Part shown: positions 595 through 6,152 of the stretch, in pieces
How the letters are laid out: the number at the start of each line of letters is the position of its first letter
How positions within the stretch are numbered: the stretch's first letter is position 1
NCBI RefSeq assembly: GCF_037042905.1
Contig: NC_087247.1
Coordinates: 37,076,001 to 37,140,000, forward strand
Source of the DNA: Lytechinus pictus
Taxonomy: Eukaryota
Length of the DNA stretch: 64,000 nt
Direction: 5' to 3'
Notes under the pieces: generated by a model
Database searches by the model: none
Told to the model about the DNA's origin: nothing
The model's input: only the letters and a program-made list of their open reading frames with translations
Translations under genes and position numbers: made by a program

Positions 595-757
595 CTGTCA
601 AAGAAAAACAAATTTGATATTGAGAAACCAGTTGACAGGTATGCATCACATATATATCTGGAATCCTAGCTCCCACCTTAAAAGATAACTACAATTTTTT
701 TAATGTTCATTCTGTTAAAATGTTATCCAGCCATTCTTCATCATCATCATCGTTGTA

Positions 758-789
758 CGGAAGAAGTAGGTAGTCCTGTAGTGCTTCCG
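758..789 (-). other. LINE 3' UTR stem-loop, likely RT recognition signal
   Basis: CGGAAG (758-763) and CTTCCG (784-789) arms enclose an ACAGG-containing loop, 7 nt from the (ATG)n tail. Confidence 0.6.
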
Positions 790-854
790 ATCATTCCTTC
801 GAAGTTTCTTAAACTGGACTTTAAAACAACTAAACGTGTGTGGAGGGCGGATAT

Positions 855-2543
855 TTATGGGAGAATTTGGTGCATGGAGGACCAGTGTTTGTCCAGTCTA
901 GTTTTGAAAATGTTTAAAGTGGATGCCGAGATTACAGAAGAAGGAAGACTGTTCCAGGAGTCAATCACTCTCTGACTAAAGCTGTTTTTCCTTAGCGATG
1001 AGTTGCTTCTATATTTGTACAGCTTCATGTGATGACCTCGAGTGATACTTTGGCCTATGGGTGTGAAGAAGAGATCTGGATCAAAGTCTACCAGTCCATT
1101 CATAATTCTATAAACTTCAATCATATCACCTCTGATTCTTCTGTAATGTAGAGAGAACATGTTGAGTTCCTTCAGTCTTGTTTCATAAGTTAGATGCTTC
1201 AGTTCAGGCACTAGCTTGGTGGCTCTTCTCTGGATCTTCTCTATCTTGATGGCATCCAATTTGAATCTTGGATACCATATAACATTGCAGTATTCAAGTA
1301 GAGGACGAACTAGTGACTTAAACAGGACAGGTAACGTTTCTCTAGATAGGTATGTAAATGTTCTCTTTATGAGTCCCAGCATCTGGTTAGCTCGATTTAC
1401 TGCTTGAGCTACATGTGCATGATAGTTAAGTTCATTATCAACAAGTACTCCTAGGTCTCTCTCAGCCTTGGTCTCTTCAAGTATCTGGTCGTCGATGTAG
1501 TATGTAGAGTTATTGTTGTTGCGACCCATGTGCATAACTTTACATTTGGACAGATTGAAGTTAAGGAGCCAGGAGTTTGCCCATTTTGTGGCTTCATACA
1601 GATCTTTTTGTAGTGATAGATGTTGGCTATTTGAAAATACCTCTCCATAAATCTTGGTATCGTCAGCATAGATCTGAATATCATTGAAAACTCTGTACGG
1701 AAGATCATTGACATAGAGGATGAAAAGCTGGGGCCCGAGGATGCTACCTTGCGCTACTCCACTGACTACCTGAGACCAGTCAGAATACTCTCCTCTTAGG
1801 GCGACTCTCTGGATTCTTCCTACAAGAAAGGCCTCAATCCATTTCAAGACATGACCATCTATTCCGTATGCTTTCAATTTCATGAGTAAGCGTTGATGAG
1901 GGACTGTGTCAAAAGCTTTTCTAACATCAAGGTACAGTATATCAATCGGTCTTCCATGGTCAAGGAGATCAGTCCATTTTTCCATTTGAACCATTAGTTG
2001 AGTGCAACAGGATCTGCCTGGAGTAAAACCATGCTGAGCATTGTGAAGGAGACTGTTATCCTTGACATGATCCATTATCTCCTCTTTTACAAGAGATTCC
2101 ATTACCTTGCAGACCATAGAAGTTAGACTTATAGGTCTATAGTTTGTTGCTTTTTGTCTACTGCCCTTTTTGTGAATAGGCACGATGTTGGCTTTCTTCC
2201 AGTCTAATGGCAAATACCCTTCTCCCATGGACAAGTTGAATATGGATGTAAGAGGGTAACTGATCTCTCTAGCCAACTCTTTCAATACTCGAGGATGAAT
2301 ACCATCAGGTCCAGCCGACTTATTTGGATTGAGAGAAAGAAGTTGTTTTTCCACTTTCTCTTGTGTGAAGTTGATGGAACCCAAAGTAGATCCCTCATGA
2401 CTCCACTCTGGTGTCATAACATTCGAGTCATCTTCTTTCGTAAAGACCTTTGAAAAAGCTTCATTAAGTGCCGACACAATATCCTCACTTTTGTATAATT
2501 TCTCTCCATTATCTAACACAAGGGATCCAATTCCTTTGTTCAG
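855..2543 (-). CDS. LINE ORF2, C-terminal part: reverse transcriptase, in a shifted frame
   Basis: KSAGPDGI, NYRPISLTS, QHGF, KAFDTVPH, QGSILGP and YADD motifs; frame reads ...LNKGIGSLVLDNGE upstream of the ORF-track start. Confidence 0.94.
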   Translation of the reverse strand: MNKGIGSLVLDNGEKLYKSEDIVSALNEAFSKVFTKEDDSNVMTPEWSHEGSTLGSINFTQEKVEKQLLSLNPNKSAGPDGIHPRVLKELAREISYPLTSIFNLSMGEGYLPLDWKKANIVPIHKKGSRQKATNYRPISLTSMVCKVMESLVKEEIMDHVKDNSLLHNAQHGFTPGRSCCTQLMVQMEKWTDLLDHGRPIDILYLDVRKAFDTVPHQRLLMKLKAYGIDGHVLKWIEAFLVGRIQRVALRGEYSDWSQVVSGVAQGSILGPQLFILYVNDLPYRVFNDIQIYADDTKIYGEVFSNSQHLSLQKDLYEATKWANSWLLNFNLSKCKVMHMGRNNNNSTYYIDDQILEETKAERDLGVLVDNELNYHAHVAQAVNRANQMLGLIKRTFTYLSRETLPVLFKSLVRPLLEYCNVIWYPRFKLDAIKIEKIQRRATKLVPELKHLTYETRLKELNMFSLHYRRIRGDMIEVYRIMNGLVDFDPDLFFTPIGQSITRGHHMKLYKYRSNSSLRKNSFSQRVIDSWNSLPSSVISASTLNIFKTRLDKHWSSMHQILP

Positions 2544-3739
2544 TTGACTTTAGAGTTTACATATCGCCAGAAGTCTTTCGGATTACTTTTTGCGTTCTTT
2601 GCTAAGTCTTTTTCAAAGGTAATCCTGAGAGTACGTGTCAATTTCCGTAACGAGTTACTGATTTCTCTATAATATCTGAAATCCTCATGACTCAGCGTGC
2701 TTTTGTAACGTTTCCATGCTCTATTTTTCCTTTTGCTTAATGCATTTGATCTTTTAGTTGTATAAACTTTTCGCTTCCTTTTGTTGGTCATGCGGGATTT
2801 AGGTATACATTCCTCTATGTGTCTATGAATAGTATCTGAAAAGACATTCCATGAATCTTTGCAGTCCAAATCTACGAGGAGATCATCCCAGTCAATCTTG
2901 GACATATTAGCTCTCATTTGATCATAGTTCCCTTTGTTGAAAAGCAAAGACTTGGAGGATAGTAGCTTTCTATCACCAATGTCAATATCCACATTGAAGT
3001 GTAAGGTGCAATGATCACTTTTTCCGAGGGGAGGTCCGCACACAATATCAGATATTGTTTCAGCTTTGTTTGAAATAACCAGGTCCAGGGTGTTACTGTG
3101 TTGGGCAACCCTATATCTCGTTGGCGAGTCAACTAATTGTGTAAAAAACAAATCCTGCAAACATTCAGCAAATTTAGAGGCTGCTGGGTTACATTGGTTT
3201 CTAGTCGAACTCGTTTGCCAGTTAATTTCAGGATAGTTAAAATCTCCAGCTATAACTAGAATATTACATGAATTTAGCGCCGAGATCATAGATTCCAATT
3301 TTTCAAACACGCTGATTAGTTTATCATTGTTCTCTTGGAAACTGGACGGGCTCCTGTACACGCAAATGAAATATATACTGGATTGCTCACCAAAGTCGAT
3401 ACGGCATCCAACAATCTCTTTGAAGTTTGTATCAAAATCCATCTCTGTTACATTTAATGACTGTTTCGAATAGACTGCAATCCCTCTGATATTATCAATA
3501 TGAAGGTTTGTATACACATTGTAGTTTTTAATGGCTATTGAAGGTTCTAGTAATTCAAATCTGCTATACTTAGGTTTAATTTCAGTTAACATTATAATGT
3601 CAGGATCTGTTCGCTCAATTTCTAACTGGAGATCTTCTAGTTTATTGCTCAGTGAATCGCAGTTACTGTACAAAACTTTCAAGTAATTAGCTTTTAGGAC
3701 TTCTGGTTTTCCTGATAATACCATGTTTACATTTTGCAC
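2540..3739 (-). CDS. LINE ORF2, N-terminal part: apurinic-like (APE) endonuclease and linker; ends at a frameshift
   Basis: YSNCDSL, LTEI, VYRSP, GDFN, LDLV and SDH motifs; first ATG at 3724. Confidence 0.92.
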   Translation of the reverse strand: MQNVNMVLSGKPEVLKANYLKVLYSNCDSLSNKLEDLQLEIERTDPDIIMLTEIKPKYSRFELLEPSIAIKNYNVYTNLHIDNIRGIAVYSKQSLNVTEMDFDTNFKEIVGCRIDFGEQSSIYFICVYRSPSSFQENNDKLISVFEKLESMISALNSCNILVIAGDFNYPEINWQTSSTRNQCNPAASKFAECLQDLFFTQLVDSPTRYRVAQHSNTLDLVISNKAETISDIVCGPPLGKSDHCTLHFNVDIDIGDRKLLSSKSLLFNKGNYDQMRANMSKIDWDDLLVDLDCKDSWNVFSDTIHRHIEECIPKSRMTNKRKRKVYTTKRSNALSKRKNRAWKRYKSTLSHEDFRYYREISNSLRKLTRTLRITFEKDLAKNAKSNPKDFWRYVNSKVN

Positions 3740-3745
3740 TGGTAG

Positions 3746-5182
3746 TCACGCATGCAGCTGTTGTTGATCGTCAGGGATGTCCAAAGGGCTTCCTCCGACA
3801 GCACCAGCAGCAACACTGTCAGCATCTACATGTAGCGTCTTGTTGAGTTGCGGAGACTGACCTTGTTTATGGGATCTATCCCGGTAACTATCATCTCTAC
3901 TAGTGGAAGTTGTGGTGCTTGCCATCGTCTCTTCTGATTGGGTTTTCGCCTCATCAGGTCTAGAATTTTTACTTCCCTTGAGGAGGTCAGAGAGACTGAT
4001 TTCCATTACTGATTGTCTGCGAACTGCTCTGTCCCTAAGCTTAACAATCTCTCCATGACGTATACCTATGTTCTCTTCACCATTGGCTCTCCTCAGTCTG
4101 AGTTCGGTGTAGAGTTCTTTTCGTTGTTTGCGTTGATTCGGTGTCAGATCAGGAGCAATGTAGGTTGTGGCCCACATATCCTTATTTCTGAGATTTTTAG
4201 CAGATCTCAGCAGAGTATTTTTGGTTGAGGAGTCCTGTAGTTCAATCAAGGTTACTCTCGGCTTAGAGAACCTGTTTTGGCCAATACCACCAAGTCTTGT
4301 AACTTTGTTTACTTCTACTCCTTCGATACCCATCCCATCTAGGATCAGTTCATCAACAATCTTTTTGTCATAGTCCTGTCTGCCTTTTGGAGAACGTGCT
4401 GTTGATTCAGGAAGGTTAAATACCACTAGATTGTTCTTTCTTCTTTCTCTTTCTATCATCTCCTCTACTGCTGCTATTCCAGCATTAGTGTTGTTTAGGG
4501 ACATGCTTTGTTTCCCTTTGCTGGGAGCTTGAAGGGGACCAGTGTTGTCGGCATAGTCTTGCATATCACCAACAACAGAGCTCTTTGCTACATCAGCGTA
4601 GTTTCTGTAACCCTTCCCACTATCTACATGGGAATTTACCACAGCAGGTTTAGCAGATCCTCTTAGTTCTTGCAGTACTTCATTCATCTTTTCTGTGATT
4701 TTTGTTTCTAATTTGTTAGCCAGCATATTGAAATCATGTACCTGTTCTAGCTCTCTATCTTTTTTCATGGCTGCTGCAGTCTTAGTTACCGATTGTTTAG
4801 CAGCAGAAATAGCTGTTGACTCACAATTACGGCAAAACCAGTGCATCTTGTTTTCTTCCACTTCAAAGATTTTGTACACCTCAGTAGTAATGCTATGGCA
4901 TTCTAGACATGACCACTGTTCACATGCTTCACATTCAATCATGCAAGAAACATTTGACTTGTTGCAATAATGGCAGACAAATTTCTCAGAGTCAGACTTA
5001 CCGGCACCAGCACCACTACTAGTCTTGTTTTTCAGTTTCTTACTCGGTGCTTGTGTGTTCTTACCTGTGGTACCAGTACTACTAGTACTACTAGGCTTTC
5101 TCTTTTGTTGTTTCTTAGAATATGATTCCTGGATACTGACAACATGCTCTTCCTCTTGCAGAATTGTATATGTAGTTTTAAA
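3746..5182 (-). CDS. LINE ORF1 protein (PHD finger, coiled coil, RRM-like domain). The frame is open from 5182; the first in-frame ATG is at 4942.
   Basis: CHYC..CEAC..C..C..WFCRNC PHD-like pattern (the usual His ligand is not obvious); ERERRKNNLVVFNLPE, RLG and YIAPDLT motifs typical of CR1 ORF1. Confidence 0.88.
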   Translation of the reverse strand, partial: FKTTYTILQEEEHVVSIQESYSKKQQKRKPSSTSSTGTTGKNTQAPSKKLKNKTSSGAGAGKSDSEKFVCHYCNKSNVSCMIECEACEQWSCLECHSITTEVYKIFEVEENKMHWFCRNCESTAISAAKQSVTKTAAAMKKDRELEQVHDFNMLANKLETKITEKMNEVLQELRGSAKPAVVNSHVDSGKGYRNYADVAKSSVVGDMQDYADNTGPLQAPSKGKQSMSLNNTNAGIAAVEEMIERERRKNNLVVFNLPESTARSPKGRQDYDKKIVDELILDGMGIEGVEVNKVTRLGGIGQNRFSKPRVTLIELQDSSTKNTLLRSAKNLRNKDMWATTYIAPDLTPNQRKQRKELYTELRLRRANGEENIGIRHGEIVKLRDRAVRRQSVMEISLSDLLKGSKNSRPDEAKTQSEETMASTTTSTSRDDSYRDRSHKQGQSPQLNKTLHVDADSVAAGAVGGSPLDIPDDQQQLHA

Positions 5183-5335
5183 TCACTCAAAGGCTGAACT
5201 GCCTCAAATATTCTGGCCAAAGAATCCAAAAGTTAATATTCAGATAAAGTAAATTCTTATCCTAAATCTCTCAAAATAAAAAAGAACTATTACAAACACA
5301 GAATGAATACATGAAGTCCAAATTTCATAGTTTAC

Positions 5336-5543
5336 CTGAGACCAAAGTGAATATTCCCATCTATAATGACTGGTCCTGCATGAATCCTGGCAATCAATGG
5401 TCTCAGGAGGGCGCTCTTCAGCATTACAGTATTCATCAGATACCTGTGAATATTCCTCTCCTTTTCTCTTCCTTTTGAGGCATTTGATCAGTCTAGTTTT
5501 CTTACACTGTTCATTGCATTCAGATTCTCTCATCACGTGCCAT
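5336..5543 (-). CDS. ADAMTS9: ADAMTS9/20-like exon, 208 nt: WHVMRESECNEQCKKTRLIKCLKRKRKGEEYSQVSDEYCNAEERPPETIDCQDSCRTSHYRWEYSLWSQ, TSR3
   Basis: caatag|A...CAG|gtaaac; core of ORF-track entry 5240..5578. Confidence 0.92.
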
Positions 5544-6152
5544 CTATTGAGGGTTGAAAATGAAATATCCTCAATCATATTAACTACATATGTTATTAAT
5601 TAATTGTCGATGTTGATATACCTTTAGAATGAATTACTCCCAATATCCGAAAGGATACATAAATAAATGAAATAATAAAGTAAGATTTGAAGAAATACTG
5701 GACAAGCAACCATTGGAATTTAGGACATCTTGTCTGAATTTACATTTTGTTCACCTTAATTCTATGTTATTTTGATGGTAATTTTATCAAAAGCAGAATG
5801 TTTGAAAAAGAACACGCACAAAAATCAGCCTCTTCATTGTTCAAAGTCCATACCAGTGTTGTGACCAATAGTAGGCCTATTTATTCTTCTTCCCATTATT
5901 GTACTCTCAAATCCATTACTTGTGCATATACATTTGATCATTCAAGCTTTATAGATAGAACGCAGAACATAGAACACAGAACATACACATTCATACAGCA
6001 ATTAAAGTGCTCTGCATTTTATGACCCAATGGTCAAAGCCAACGGTCAATGGCAATACATTTTTCTTGACTGATGGGAGTGTATAAATGCTTGAATTGCT
6101 TGGTATTAATCATCCAGGTGGCTAATGCCATTCAATCATGATCAAGAGACTT

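What the first reader, a model, noticed from the sequence alone, without database searches (positions are those of the whole stretch)
3668..3760. CR1 LINE ORF1 and ORF2 are in frame, separated by one UGA-CUA: candidate stop-codon readthrough
Seen: the minus strand reads CTG CAT GCG TGA CTA CCA GTG CAA AAT GTA AAC ATG GTA. The TGA at 3748-3746 is the only stop between ORF1 and the endonuclease frame. GUGCAAAAU (starting +7 from the stop, 3739-3731) can pair with GUUUUGUAC (3676-3668), 9 bp with two G-U pairs. ORF1 ends in a ~100-aa low-complexity linker. Established: UGA-CUA is the leaky context of Sindbis-type alphaviruses, mammalian readthrough genes use UGA-CUAG, and such signals are often boosted by a stem starting about 8 nt downstream. 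Characterised LINEs use reinitiation (L1) or overlapping stop/start coupling (SART1) for ORF2. Inference: this family may make a gag-pol-like ORF1-ORF2 fusion, with readthrough setting the ORF1p:ORF2p ratio. Caveats: a good-context ATG (AAC ATG G, 3724) precedes the APE domain, so reinitiation is equally possible, and I cannot check whether this is already reported for CR1.
Basis: partly seen in the sequence, partly recalled or inferred. Interest (0 to 1): 0.8.

Follow-up and report, generated by a model that had tools for sequence, protein, structure and literature searches.

The report
Leaky UGA joins LINE ORF1 and ORF2
In a large group of CR1-like jumping genes, the two genes are kept in one reading frame and separated only by a "weak" stop (UGA followed by C, usually CUA). 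The element therefore probably makes its enzyme as a rare ORF1-ORF2 fusion by reading through the stop, as some retroviruses make Gag-Pol.

Summary
On the minus strand, ORF1 ends at TGA (3748-3746), followed by CTA, and the endonuclease frame continues in phase.

The window copy is dead: it is 5'-truncated near 5167 and ORF2 is broken near 2543. Three 99.4-99.7% identical copies elsewhere keep TGA-CTA, and two of them have an intact ORF1 and ORF2.

The decisive evidence is comparative.
- **Conserved junction.** Eighteen deeply diverged families (14 in this genome, 4 from other sources) have ORF1 and ORF2 in frame, split by a single stop. The stop is always UGA, +4 is always C, and +5 is U in 15 of 18. 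The flanks and spacer length (9-267 codons) vary freely.
- **No start codon.** Six families have no in-frame AUG between the UGA and the catalytic Asn of the endonuclease. In one, that Asn lies only 9 codons after the stop.
- **Relatives.** Out-of-frame relatives mostly end ORF1 in TAA or TAG. Eight of nine -1-overlap relatives carry a classical slippery heptamer in the overlap.

Programmed UGA readthrough giving an ORF1p-ORF2p fusion is the best explanation (about 0.78).

The proposed downstream stem exists but has no counterpart in other families.

Translation itself is untested.

The parts
738..5167 (-). 5'-truncated, frameshifted copy of a young CR1-like LINE (about 4.4 kb of a longer element).
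   Evidence: Homology to the other copies begins near 5167. Loose ends of reads and contigs fall at 5167 and at 737-740. Identity to the C12 and C5 copies is 99.4%.
3749..5182 (-). ORF1 remnant. The frame is open for 478 codons, and element homology starts near 5167. The true start codon is missing; intact copies encode 562 aa.
4815..4990 (-). Cys/His (PHD-like) zinc finger of ORF1p.
   Evidence: The motif CHYC...CEACEQWSCLEC...HWFCRNC is present. AF2 pLDDT is about 85. PHD Pfam hits are seen only on ORF1s of relatives.
4634..4831 (-). Long helix (coiled coil) of ORF1p.
   Evidence: The AF2 model has a helix at residues 202-267 of the 562-aa protein.
4025..4489 (-). RRM plus C-terminal domain of ORF1p, with an L1-ORF1p-like fold.
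   Evidence: AF2 pLDDT is about 92. Foldseek matches the human LINE-1 ORF1p trimer 2yko at E = 2e-6, probability 1.0.
3749..3979 (-). Disordered, low-complexity C-terminal tail of ORF1p that leads into the stop.
   Evidence: pLDDT is below 50 for residues 486-562.
3743..3748 (-). UGA-CUA: the single in-frame stop and its 3' context. This is the proposed readthrough signal.
   Evidence: Sequence. Identical in 4 copies. UGA-C is present in 18 of 18 families.
3722..3724 (-). In-frame AUG (AAC AUG G), 8 codons after the stop. It is a possible but non-conserved alternative start.
   Evidence: It is absent at the equivalent place in the closest family (L010) and in six families altogether.
3668..3739 (-). 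The 3' arm overlaps the codons for the conserved V-L-Y of the first endonuclease strand.
   Evidence: No equivalent helix exists in the other families.
3662..3664 (-). Codon of the conserved catalytic Asn of the APE-type endonuclease (Y-S/T-N-x-D-S-L), 28 codons after the stop.
   Evidence: Invariant N28 in alignment A1.
3011..3664 (-). Apurinic-type endonuclease domain of ORF2.
   Evidence: Pfam Exo_endo_phos at E = 6e-12 and Exo_endo_phos_2 at E = 2.5e-14.
2520..2545 (-). The place where ORF2 of this copy is broken: a 1-nt indel relative to the other copies, which creates an in-frame TGA at 2542-2540.
   Evidence: Contigs of the other copies differ by one letter at 2543. The other copies have an open frame of 963 aa.
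1503..2177 (-). Reverse transcriptase domain of ORF2.
   Evidence: Pfam RVT_1 at E = 5.7e-34.
738..857 (-). ORF2 stop (TAA, 857-855), a short 3' UTR and a (GAT)n microsatellite tail. There is no poly(A).
   Evidence: Loose ends at 737-740.

Best explanation
The junction is a programmed stop-codon readthrough site of a CR1-like LINE.

Proposed mechanism:
- Most ribosomes translating the element's RNA terminate at UGA and release ORF1p. ORF1p consists of a zinc finger, a coiled coil, an RRM-CTD module and a disordered tail.
- UGA followed by C, and especially by CUA, is the weakest termination context in eukaryotes. A small fraction of ribosomes therefore insert an amino acid there.
- Those ribosomes continue in frame through a short flexible spacer into the endonuclease-reverse transcriptase, producing an ORF1p-ORF2p fusion.
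- This fixes a high ORF1p:ORF2p ratio, as Gag:Gag-Pol is fixed in murine leukaemia virus. It would also tether the enzyme, through the ORF1p coiled coil and RRM, to the RNA that encoded it.

Shown here:
- the anatomy of the junction;
- conservation of frame, of UGA and of the C(U) context across 18 deeply diverged families;
- absence of any AUG before the catalytic Asn in several families;
- frame-specific openness of the spacer from the first codon after the stop.

Inferred, not shown: that ribosomes actually read through, at what rate, and that the fusion is the active form.

The signal appears to be the stop context alone. No conserved downstream RNA structure was found.
For: 1. **Not a copy-specific mutation.** All four 99.4-99.7% identical copies have TGA-CTA. 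The C12 and C5 copies have an ORF1 of 562 aa from its first ATG, open to the TGA, and an ORF2 open frame of 963 aa. Thirty copies across 10 family groups all keep TGAC.

2. **Conserved across families.** Fourteen families in this genome have ORF1 and ORF2 in frame with exactly one stop. Their endonuclease is 33-54% identical to the window family at the amino-acid level. Four families from other sources show the same arrangement (L085, L148, L149, L151).
   - UGA 18/18, +4 C 18/18, +5 U 15/18, +6 A 10/18.
   - All other flanking positions vary.
   - All four Leu codons CUA/CUG/CUC/CUU occur after the stop.

3. **Phylogeny.** In the careful IQ-TREE run, 11 readthrough-type families form a 99/95-supported clade with terminal branches of 0.35-0.97 substitutions per amino-acid site. 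The L019/L058 family sits with +1-overlap families (100/99). L085 sits elsewhere. At least 4 state changes are needed, and no bootstrap tree gives a single origin. Every in-frame UGA lineage has UGA-C.

4. **Specificity.** UGA-C occurs in 18 of 20 in-frame families but only 2 of 15 overlapping, out-of-frame families (Fisher p = 1.1e-5). ORF2's own stops are a mix; TGAC is 1 of 15.

5. **No start codon.** There is no in-frame Met between the UGA and the catalytic Asn in L013, L014, L019, L023, L149 and L151. In L019 the Asn is the 9th codon after the stop. In L010 and L027 the only Met lies 3-6 residues before the Asn.

6. **Spacer is coding.** The spacer from UGA to the Asn varies from 9 to 267 codons yet is always in phase. 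It has 0 stops in frame 0 over 1,642 codons, against 114 and 227 in the other two frames.

7. **Sister lineages point to fusion too.** Eight of nine -1-overlap families have a canonical slippery heptamer (A_AAA_AAC, C_CCU_UUA or U_UUU_UUA) in the ORF1 frame inside the overlap. About 2.1 are expected (P about 2e-5).

8. **The context works elsewhere.** UGA-CUA(G) alone gives efficient readthrough in animal cells, and 12 nt 3' of the stop suffice (Loughran et al. 2014, PMC4132726, read).

9. **Architecture suits a tethered fusion.** ORF1p has an L1-ORF1p-like coiled coil-RRM-CTD fold and a disordered tail.
Against: - There is no direct evidence of translation. RNA-seq of the species covers the junction with only 0-3 reads. 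No ribosome profiling or proteomics was available.
- Human L1 ORF2 is translated by an unconventional, AUG-independent mechanism. That statement is made in the reviews read. Absence of AUG is therefore not decisive on its own.
- The window family itself has an AUG in good context 8 codons after the stop.
- The hosts of the external contigs are unknown.
- Families within one genome are not fully independent, although they are very divergent.
- The RT-based assignment to CR1 proper could not be tested.
Confidence: 0.78

Rival explanations
1. Termination-reinitiation or another internal initiation. Ribosomes terminate at UGA, and some resume at the nearby AUG (3724-3722) or, as reported for human L1, at a non-AUG codon. 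ORF2p is then made as a separate protein.
For: - There is precedent in L1 and SART1, as described in the reviews read.
- The window family has AAC AUG G eight codons after the stop.
- Several families have a Met within 30 codons of the stop.
Against: - Reinitiation does not require ORF1 and ORF2 to share a frame. Yet the frame is kept in 18 families despite spacers of 9-267 codons.
- It predicts no preference for UGA-C over UAA or UAG (18/18 here).
- The AUG is not conserved and is absent before the catalytic Asn in six families. In L019 only 4 non-AUG codons precede the first endonuclease strand.
- No stop/start overlap of the SART1 kind is present.
- The stretch between the stop and the first AUG is never interrupted by a stop, for example 97 codons in L027.
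Confidence: 0.13
2. The UGA is removed or recoded by another route: A-to-I editing to UGG, selenocysteine insertion, or a small intron spanning the stop.
For: None positive. RNA coverage at the junction is too low to exclude editing or splicing.
Against: - No SECIS or any other Rfam family is found in the element.
- No joint across the stop appears in reads or contigs.
- No splice-like motifs are conserved around the stop.
- The edited A would have a 5' G neighbour, which ADARs disfavour (established knowledge).
- No conserved duplex includes the stop.
Confidence: 0.04
3. The in-frame TGA is an inherited accident with no role, such as a nonsense mutation in a single-ORF ancestor carried along by hitch-hiking.
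For: Copies within one family are near-identical, so within-family sharing alone proves nothing.
Against: - The feature persists across families separated by about 1 or more substitutions per amino-acid site, and it arose or switched at least 3-4 times.
- Young families with multiple near-identical, full-ORF copies carry it, so elements with it transpose.
- The neighbouring C and U are conserved as well.
Confidence: 0.03

Closest known systems
Gag-Pol readthrough of gammaretroviruses (MuLV) and of some LTR retrotransposons
   Same: A retroelement keeps its structural, RNA-binding gene and its polymerase gene in one frame, separated by a single leaky stop. A fixed minority of ribosomes therefore make a fusion.
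   Different: MuLV uses UAG plus an obligatory pseudoknot about 8 nt downstream. Here the stop is UGA, the signal seems to be the C(UA) context alone, and no conserved structure was found. The element is a non-LTR retrotransposon with no protease to separate the fusion and no 2A motif in the spacer.
UGA-CUA(G) context-driven readthrough: alphavirus nsP3/nsP4 junction; vertebrate OPRL1, OPRK1, AQP4, MAPK10 (Loughran et al. 2014, PMC4132726)
   Same: The stop is UGA, C is invariant at +4, CUA predominates and CUAG is present in some families (L033, L063, L151). Short linear context suffices in the known cases.
   Different: Those are viral replicase or cellular genes with short extensions. Here the extension is an entire enzyme of about 960 aa in a LINE. 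CUG, CUC, CUU, CGU, CAU and CAC variants also occur.
Known LINE ORF2 translation mechanisms: human L1 unconventional termination/reinitiation and SART1 UAAUG coupling
   Same: A bicistronic-looking LINE RNA must produce much less ORF2p than ORF1p.
   Different: L1 has an in-frame spacer with additional stops (own knowledge). SART1 has an overlapping stop/start with a downstream structure. Neither yields a fusion, and neither conserves the frame with a single UGA-C.
-1 programmed ribosomal frameshifting at X_XXY_YYZ heptamers (retroviral gag-pro-pol)
   Same: Sister lineages of these LINEs have ORF2 overlapping ORF1 in the -1 frame, with A_AAA_AAC, C_CCU_UUA or U_UUU_UUA in the overlap. This is the alternative route to the same fusion.
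   Different: It does not apply to the window family, which is in frame. It is inferred from sequence only.

Membership tests
Programmed stop-codon readthrough site (context type UGA-C / UGA-CUA) | The leaky stop is UGA. | tested here: met
   TGA at 3748-3746. UGA in 18 of 18 in-frame families.
Programmed stop-codon readthrough site (context type UGA-C / UGA-CUA) | C at +4, typically CUA(G) immediately 3' of the stop. | tested here: met
   The window has CTA. Across families, +4 C is 18/18, +5 U is 15/18 and +6 A is 10/18. The motif definition comes from PMC4132726.
Programmed stop-codon readthrough site (context type UGA-C / UGA-CUA) | The downstream frame is open and coding from the first codon after the stop, and the stop plus its context are conserved across deep divergence. 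| tested here: met
   Frame 0 has 0 stops in 1,642 spacer codons, against 114 and 227 in the other frames. Conservation is shown on the tree.
Programmed stop-codon readthrough site (context type UGA-C / UGA-CUA) | Measured readthrough above background, or a detected fusion protein. | not testable with these tools
   Only 0-3 RNA-seq reads cover the junction. No translation data were available.
MuLV-type readthrough (stop plus downstream pseudoknot or stem about 8 nt 3') | A conserved stimulatory RNA structure starts about 8 nt after the stop. | tested here: not met
   The window family has a 9-bp helix starting 7 nt after the stop. Thirteen other families have none of 9 bp or more. Fold z-scores range from -1.7 to +1.7. 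Covariation cannot be tested within the family because its copies are 99% identical.
Termination-reinitiation (SART1 UAAUG type) | An overlapping or closely adjacent stop/start with a conserved AUG. | tested here: not met
   There is no overlap. The AUG is 8 codons away in the window family and absent before the catalytic Asn in six families.
Selenocysteine recoding of UGA | A SECIS element in the transcript. | tested here: not met
   No Rfam match at E of 1 or below in window 600-5400.
CR1-group LINE (Jockey superfamily) | ORF2 has an N-terminal APE-type endonuclease and a reverse transcriptase. | tested here: met
   Pfam Exo_endo_phos_2, Exo_endo_phos and RVT_1.
CR1-group LINE (Jockey superfamily) | ORF1p has a zinc finger (PHD-like), a coiled coil and an RRM-type RNA-binding module. 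| tested here: met
   A Cys/His finger, a long helix and an RRM-CTD fold matching L1 ORF1p. The PHD Pfam hit is significant only on ORF1s of relatives. The window family scores nothing at E below 0.05.
CR1-group LINE (Jockey superfamily) | The 3' end is a short tandem repeat rather than poly(A). | tested here: met
   A (GAT)n tail at about 738-752, with loose ends at 737-740.
CR1-group LINE (Jockey superfamily) | The RT groups with reference CR1 sequences rather than L2, Rex1 or other clades. | not testable with these tools
   No reference TE library (Repbase or Dfam) was available. The nearest named database hits are unannotated Branchiostoma proteins. 'CR1-like' is therefore provisional.

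The most novel reading that the evidence does not exclude
A whole clade of CR1-like LINEs in marine invertebrates expresses ORF2 only as an ORF1p-ORF2p fusion, through ribosomal recoding. The recoding mode switches between lineages: UGA-CUN readthrough in some, -1 frameshifting at A_AAA_AAC-type heptamers in sister lineages, and +1 overlaps in others. This is the same pattern seen for gag-pol in retroviruses and LTR elements. The gag-pol translational logic would then also operate in non-LTR retrotransposons, whether by shared ancestry or convergence. LINE cis-preference in these families would be achieved by physical fusion.
Probability: 0.6. Interest if true: 0.85.

Novelty: new variant of a known kind. 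Interest (0 to 1): 0.8.

Why it matters
How LINEs make a little ORF2p from a bicistronic RNA is a long-standing problem, solved only partly and only for L1 and SART1.

A conserved single UGA-C(UA) between in-frame ORFs gives a simple answer for a large and currently active group of LINEs, and that answer can be tested directly. It predicts a fusion protein that nobody has looked for. It would extend programmed readthrough from retroviruses and LTR elements to non-LTR elements; the sister lineages suggest the same for -1 frameshifting.

There are practical consequences too.
- Annotation pipelines that start ORF2 at the first Met will truncate the endonuclease in these families.
- These junctions offer a natural series of UGA-CUN contexts for studying termination efficiency in invertebrate deuterostomes.

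Tried and rejected
- **More genome loci.** Analysis was therefore limited to the 64 loci of about 3.5 kb, and families L043, L044, L049 and L063 could not be placed on the ORF2 tree.
- **RNA evidence.** Three rRNA-depleted RNA-seq runs of the species give only 0-3 reads over the junction. They say nothing about editing, splicing or expression level. Two reads over the junction carry the letter that the other three copies have at 3730 and the window copy lacks.
- **Within-family dN/dS of the post-stop spacer.** Copies are too similar to be informative.
- **Domains in the long post-stop spacers (L027, L033, L043, L044, L063).** There are no Pfam domains. The spacers are acidic and low-complexity, and only the start of the endonuclease is recognised.
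- **2A (NPGP) motif that could split the fusion.** It is absent from all UGA-C families and present only in three distant external contigs.
- **Rfam scan of the element.** No matches.
- **Conserved downstream structure.** None found.
- **Literature.** Ten full-text searches and targeted reading found no report of readthrough or slippery-site frameshifting between LINE ORF1 and ORF2. The papers read were recoding and reinitiation reviews, the Jockey-superfamily ORF1 paper, a 2026 CR1 survey, the esterase paper, the gastropod non-LTR paper and the non-LTR 2A paper. Kojima 2005 and Kapitonov & Jurka 2003 were not held. Repbase notes could not be checked.
- **Other.** The external Branchiostoma copy L152 is 5'-truncated and uninformative. 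P0011 returned no DNA.
Full report
**What is in the window**

On the minus strand the sequence reads CTG CAT GCG TGA CTA CCA GTG CAA AAT GTA AAC ATG GTA, as reported.
- Upstream of the TGA (3748-3746) the frame is open for 478 codons.
- Downstream, the same frame runs into an APE-type endonuclease (Pfam Exo_endo_phos_2, E = 2.5e-14). After a break near 2543 it continues into a reverse transcriptase (RVT_1, E = 5.7e-34).
- The element ends in a TAA at 857-855, a 3' UTR of about 100 nt and a (GAT)n tail at about 738-752.

The window copy is a dead insertion. Homology to the other copies starts only near 5167, so about 115 N-terminal codons of the 562-aa ORF1 are missing. ORF2 is broken by a 1-nt indel relative to the other copies.

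ORF1p of an intact copy was modelled with 13 aligned relatives. It has a disordered N-terminus, a Cys/His finger, a 65-residue helix, a well-predicted alpha/beta module and a 77-residue disordered tail. The alpha/beta module matches the human LINE-1 ORF1p trimer (Foldseek E = 2e-6).

**The stop is not a private mutation**

The genome is 811 Mb; an earlier scan note calls it an invertebrate deuterostome. It holds three more copies of the family, on C12, C5 and C11, that are 99.4-99.7% identical over the shared element and have unrelated flanks. All have TGA-CTA. The C12 and C5 copies have the full 562-aa ORF1 and an ORF2 open frame of 963 aa. DNA contigs of the species show no alternative letter at the stop.

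**The junction is conserved across very divergent families**

Protein searches of the genome with the endonuclease and with ORF1 returned many other LINE families. In the 64 loci that could be fetched, 14 distinct families have ORF1 and ORF2 in the same frame with exactly one stop between them. Their endonuclease is 33-54% identical to the window family. The stop is always TGA followed by C:

| Context after TGA | Families |
|---|---|
| CTA | window family, L019, L023, L033, L043, L044, L049, L063 |
| CTG | L013 |
| CTC or CTT | L014/L017, L021/L059 |
| CTT | L042 |
| CGT | L010/L039 |
| CAT | L027 |

Relatives from other sources add four more families:
- L148, from a Tara Oceans marine metagenome: TGA CTT.
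- L149, from a eukaryotic contig that also carries an actin-capping-protein gene: TGA CTA.
- L151: TGA CTA G.
- L085, more distant: TGA CAC.

Over the 18 families, UGA is 18/18, +4 C is 18/18, +5 U is 15/18 and +6 A is 10/18. Every other position from -12 to +15 varies. The spacer peptides are unalignable and differ in length.

**Phylogeny**

A careful maximum-likelihood tree was built from about 700 ORF2 residues.
- Eleven UGA-C families (8 own, 3 external) fall in one clade with 99/95 support. Terminal branches are 0.35-0.97 substitutions per site, so synonymous sites are saturated between families.
- The L019/L058 family groups instead with +1-overlap families (100/99).
- L085 lies elsewhere.
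- The label needs at least four changes, and no bootstrap tree gives a single origin.

The in-frame arrangement has therefore been kept for a very long time and has arisen or been exchanged repeatedly, each time as UGA-C. By contrast, only 2 of 15 out-of-frame families end ORF1 in TGA-C; the rest use TAA or TAG (Fisher p = 1.1e-5). ORF2's own stops are a mixture.

**Evidence against a separate ORF2 start**

The catalytic Asn of the endonuclease (Y-T/S-N-x-D-S-L, invariant in alignment A1) lies 9 to 267 codons after the UGA.
- Six families (L013, L014, L019, L023, L149, L151) have no in-frame Met in between.
- In L019 the first endonuclease strand starts four codons after the stop, and the first Met follows the Asn.
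- In L010 and L027 the only Met is 3-6 residues before the Asn.
- The Met of the window family is absent from its closest relative, L010.
- The spacers are always in phase despite their length differences. They contain no stop in frame 0 over 1,642 codons, against 114 and 227 in the other frames.
- The stretch between the UGA and the first AUG is never interrupted, for example 97 codons in L027.

Reinitiation or internal initiation predicts none of this. Human L1, however, is reported to translate ORF2 without needing its AUG (reviews read). For that reason the missing AUG alone would not be conclusive; the conserved frame and the conserved UGA-C carry the argument.

**Sister lineages**

Most external relatives have ORF2 overlapping ORF1 by 46-319 nt in the -1 frame, with ORF1 ending in TAA or TAG. 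Eight of nine carry a classical slippery heptamer in the ORF1 frame inside the overlap: A_AAA_AAC in five, C_CCU_UUA in two and U_UUU_UUA in one. About 2.1 would be expected from the rate elsewhere in the same ORFs (P about 2e-5). This points to -1 frameshifting, which also yields an ORF1-ORF2 fusion. It supports fusion by recoding as the general strategy of the group. A third set, including the own-genome families L011/L012 and L025/L026, overlaps in +1.

**The proposed stem**

The 9-bp helix exists and is in the MFE fold (pair probability 0.65, -4.5 kcal/mol with its 54-nt loop). A comparable helix appears in 2.8% of shuffles. Several points count against it as part of the signal.
- The downstream 123 nt are not unusually stable (z = +1.06).
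- None of 13 other families has a helix of 9 bp or more at that place.
- Fold z-scores scatter around zero.
- Its 3' arm lies on the codons of the conserved V-L-Y strand, so part of it is there for coding reasons.

The family's copies are too similar for covariation analysis. I treat the stem as unsupported, though not excluded as a family-specific enhancer. UGA-CUA(G) needs only about 12 nt of 3' context in animal cells (PMC4132726).

**Other routes**

- No SECIS or any other Rfam family was found in the element.
- No splice joint across the stop was seen.
- No 2A motif occurs in the spacers.
- RNA-seq coverage is too low to test editing. The A of UGA has a 5' G, a poor ADAR context (own knowledge).

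**Comparison with known systems, and novelty**

Functionally this is the MuLV Gag-Pol strategy executed with the alphavirus/OPRL1-type UGA-CUA context, in a non-LTR retrotransposon.

Ten full-text searches and reading of the relevant reviews and LINE papers found no report of readthrough, or of slippery-site frameshifting, between LINE ORF1 and ORF2. Two key older papers and Repbase notes could not be consulted, so prior mention cannot be excluded. The scan's own notes on this genome contain nothing on readthrough.

Assignment to CR1 proper, as opposed to a neighbouring clade of the Jockey superfamily, rests on architecture and the microsatellite tail. It could not be tested phylogenetically.

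**Verdict**

Selection on an in-frame UGA-C(UA) junction is very well supported. Translational readthrough giving an ORF1p-ORF2p fusion is the best mechanism (about 0.78), and reinitiation is the main rival (about 0.13). The stem is not supported.

Noticed in passing
L065, L068, L069, L070, L071, L072, L150, L153 (external relatives): ORF1/ORF2 overlaps: ORF2 overlaps ORF1 in the -1 frame. A canonical slippery heptamer (A_AAA_AAC, C_CCU_UUA or U_UUU_UUA) sits in the ORF1 frame inside the overlap in 8 of 9 families, against about 2.1 expected (P about 2e-5). This suggests -1 programmed frameshifting in LINEs.
   Followed up: partly
L011/L012 (C20:9.21M, C7:18.76M) and L025/L026 (C17:7.18M, C4:4.99M): Own-genome LINE families in which ORF1 ends in TAA and ORF2 overlaps it by 68-92 nt in the +1 frame. 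The L019 readthrough-type family is their close relative. No +1 shift site was identified.
   Followed up: no
L076 and L078 (metagenome contigs): ORF2 overlaps ORF1 in +1, yet ORF1 ends in UGA-C (GGT TGA C, CAG TGA C). This may be +1 shifting at a weak stop, as in antizyme.
   Followed up: no
L074 (metagenome contig), junction near position 965: ORF1 and ORF2 are in frame and separated by a single TAG followed by CAA TAT. There is no Met in the 94 codons before the endonuclease. This may be a UAG-type readthrough variant.
   Followed up: no
L044:2413-3432 (C9:25.18M): After its UGA-CUA this family has at least 340 codons of a highly repetitive acidic sequence (EIEESxAEMEKEI-like units), open only in the ORF1 frame. 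The endonuclease lies beyond the fetched locus.
   Followed up: partly
window 5240-5578 (minus strand), just upstream of the truncated LINE: A 112-aa ORF with Cys-rich and W-x-x-W-like motifs (…CQDSCRTSHYRWEYSLWSQ…) may be an exon of a host gene into which the LINE inserted.
   Followed up: no
window 836-910: RNA-seq reads pile up here, at the LINE's 3' end, to depth 11-29. They carry fixed differences (852 T>C, 861 G>A, a 1-nt deletion at 866) and loose ends that lead into other sequence. A related element, or a SINE-like derivative sharing this 3' end, is expressed far more than the LINE body.
   Followed up: no
L092, L096, L115 (distant external contigs): 2A-like D(V/I)ExNPGP motifs occur in the LINE reading frames; L092 has two in tandem. 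None occurs in the UGA-C families.
   Followed up: no
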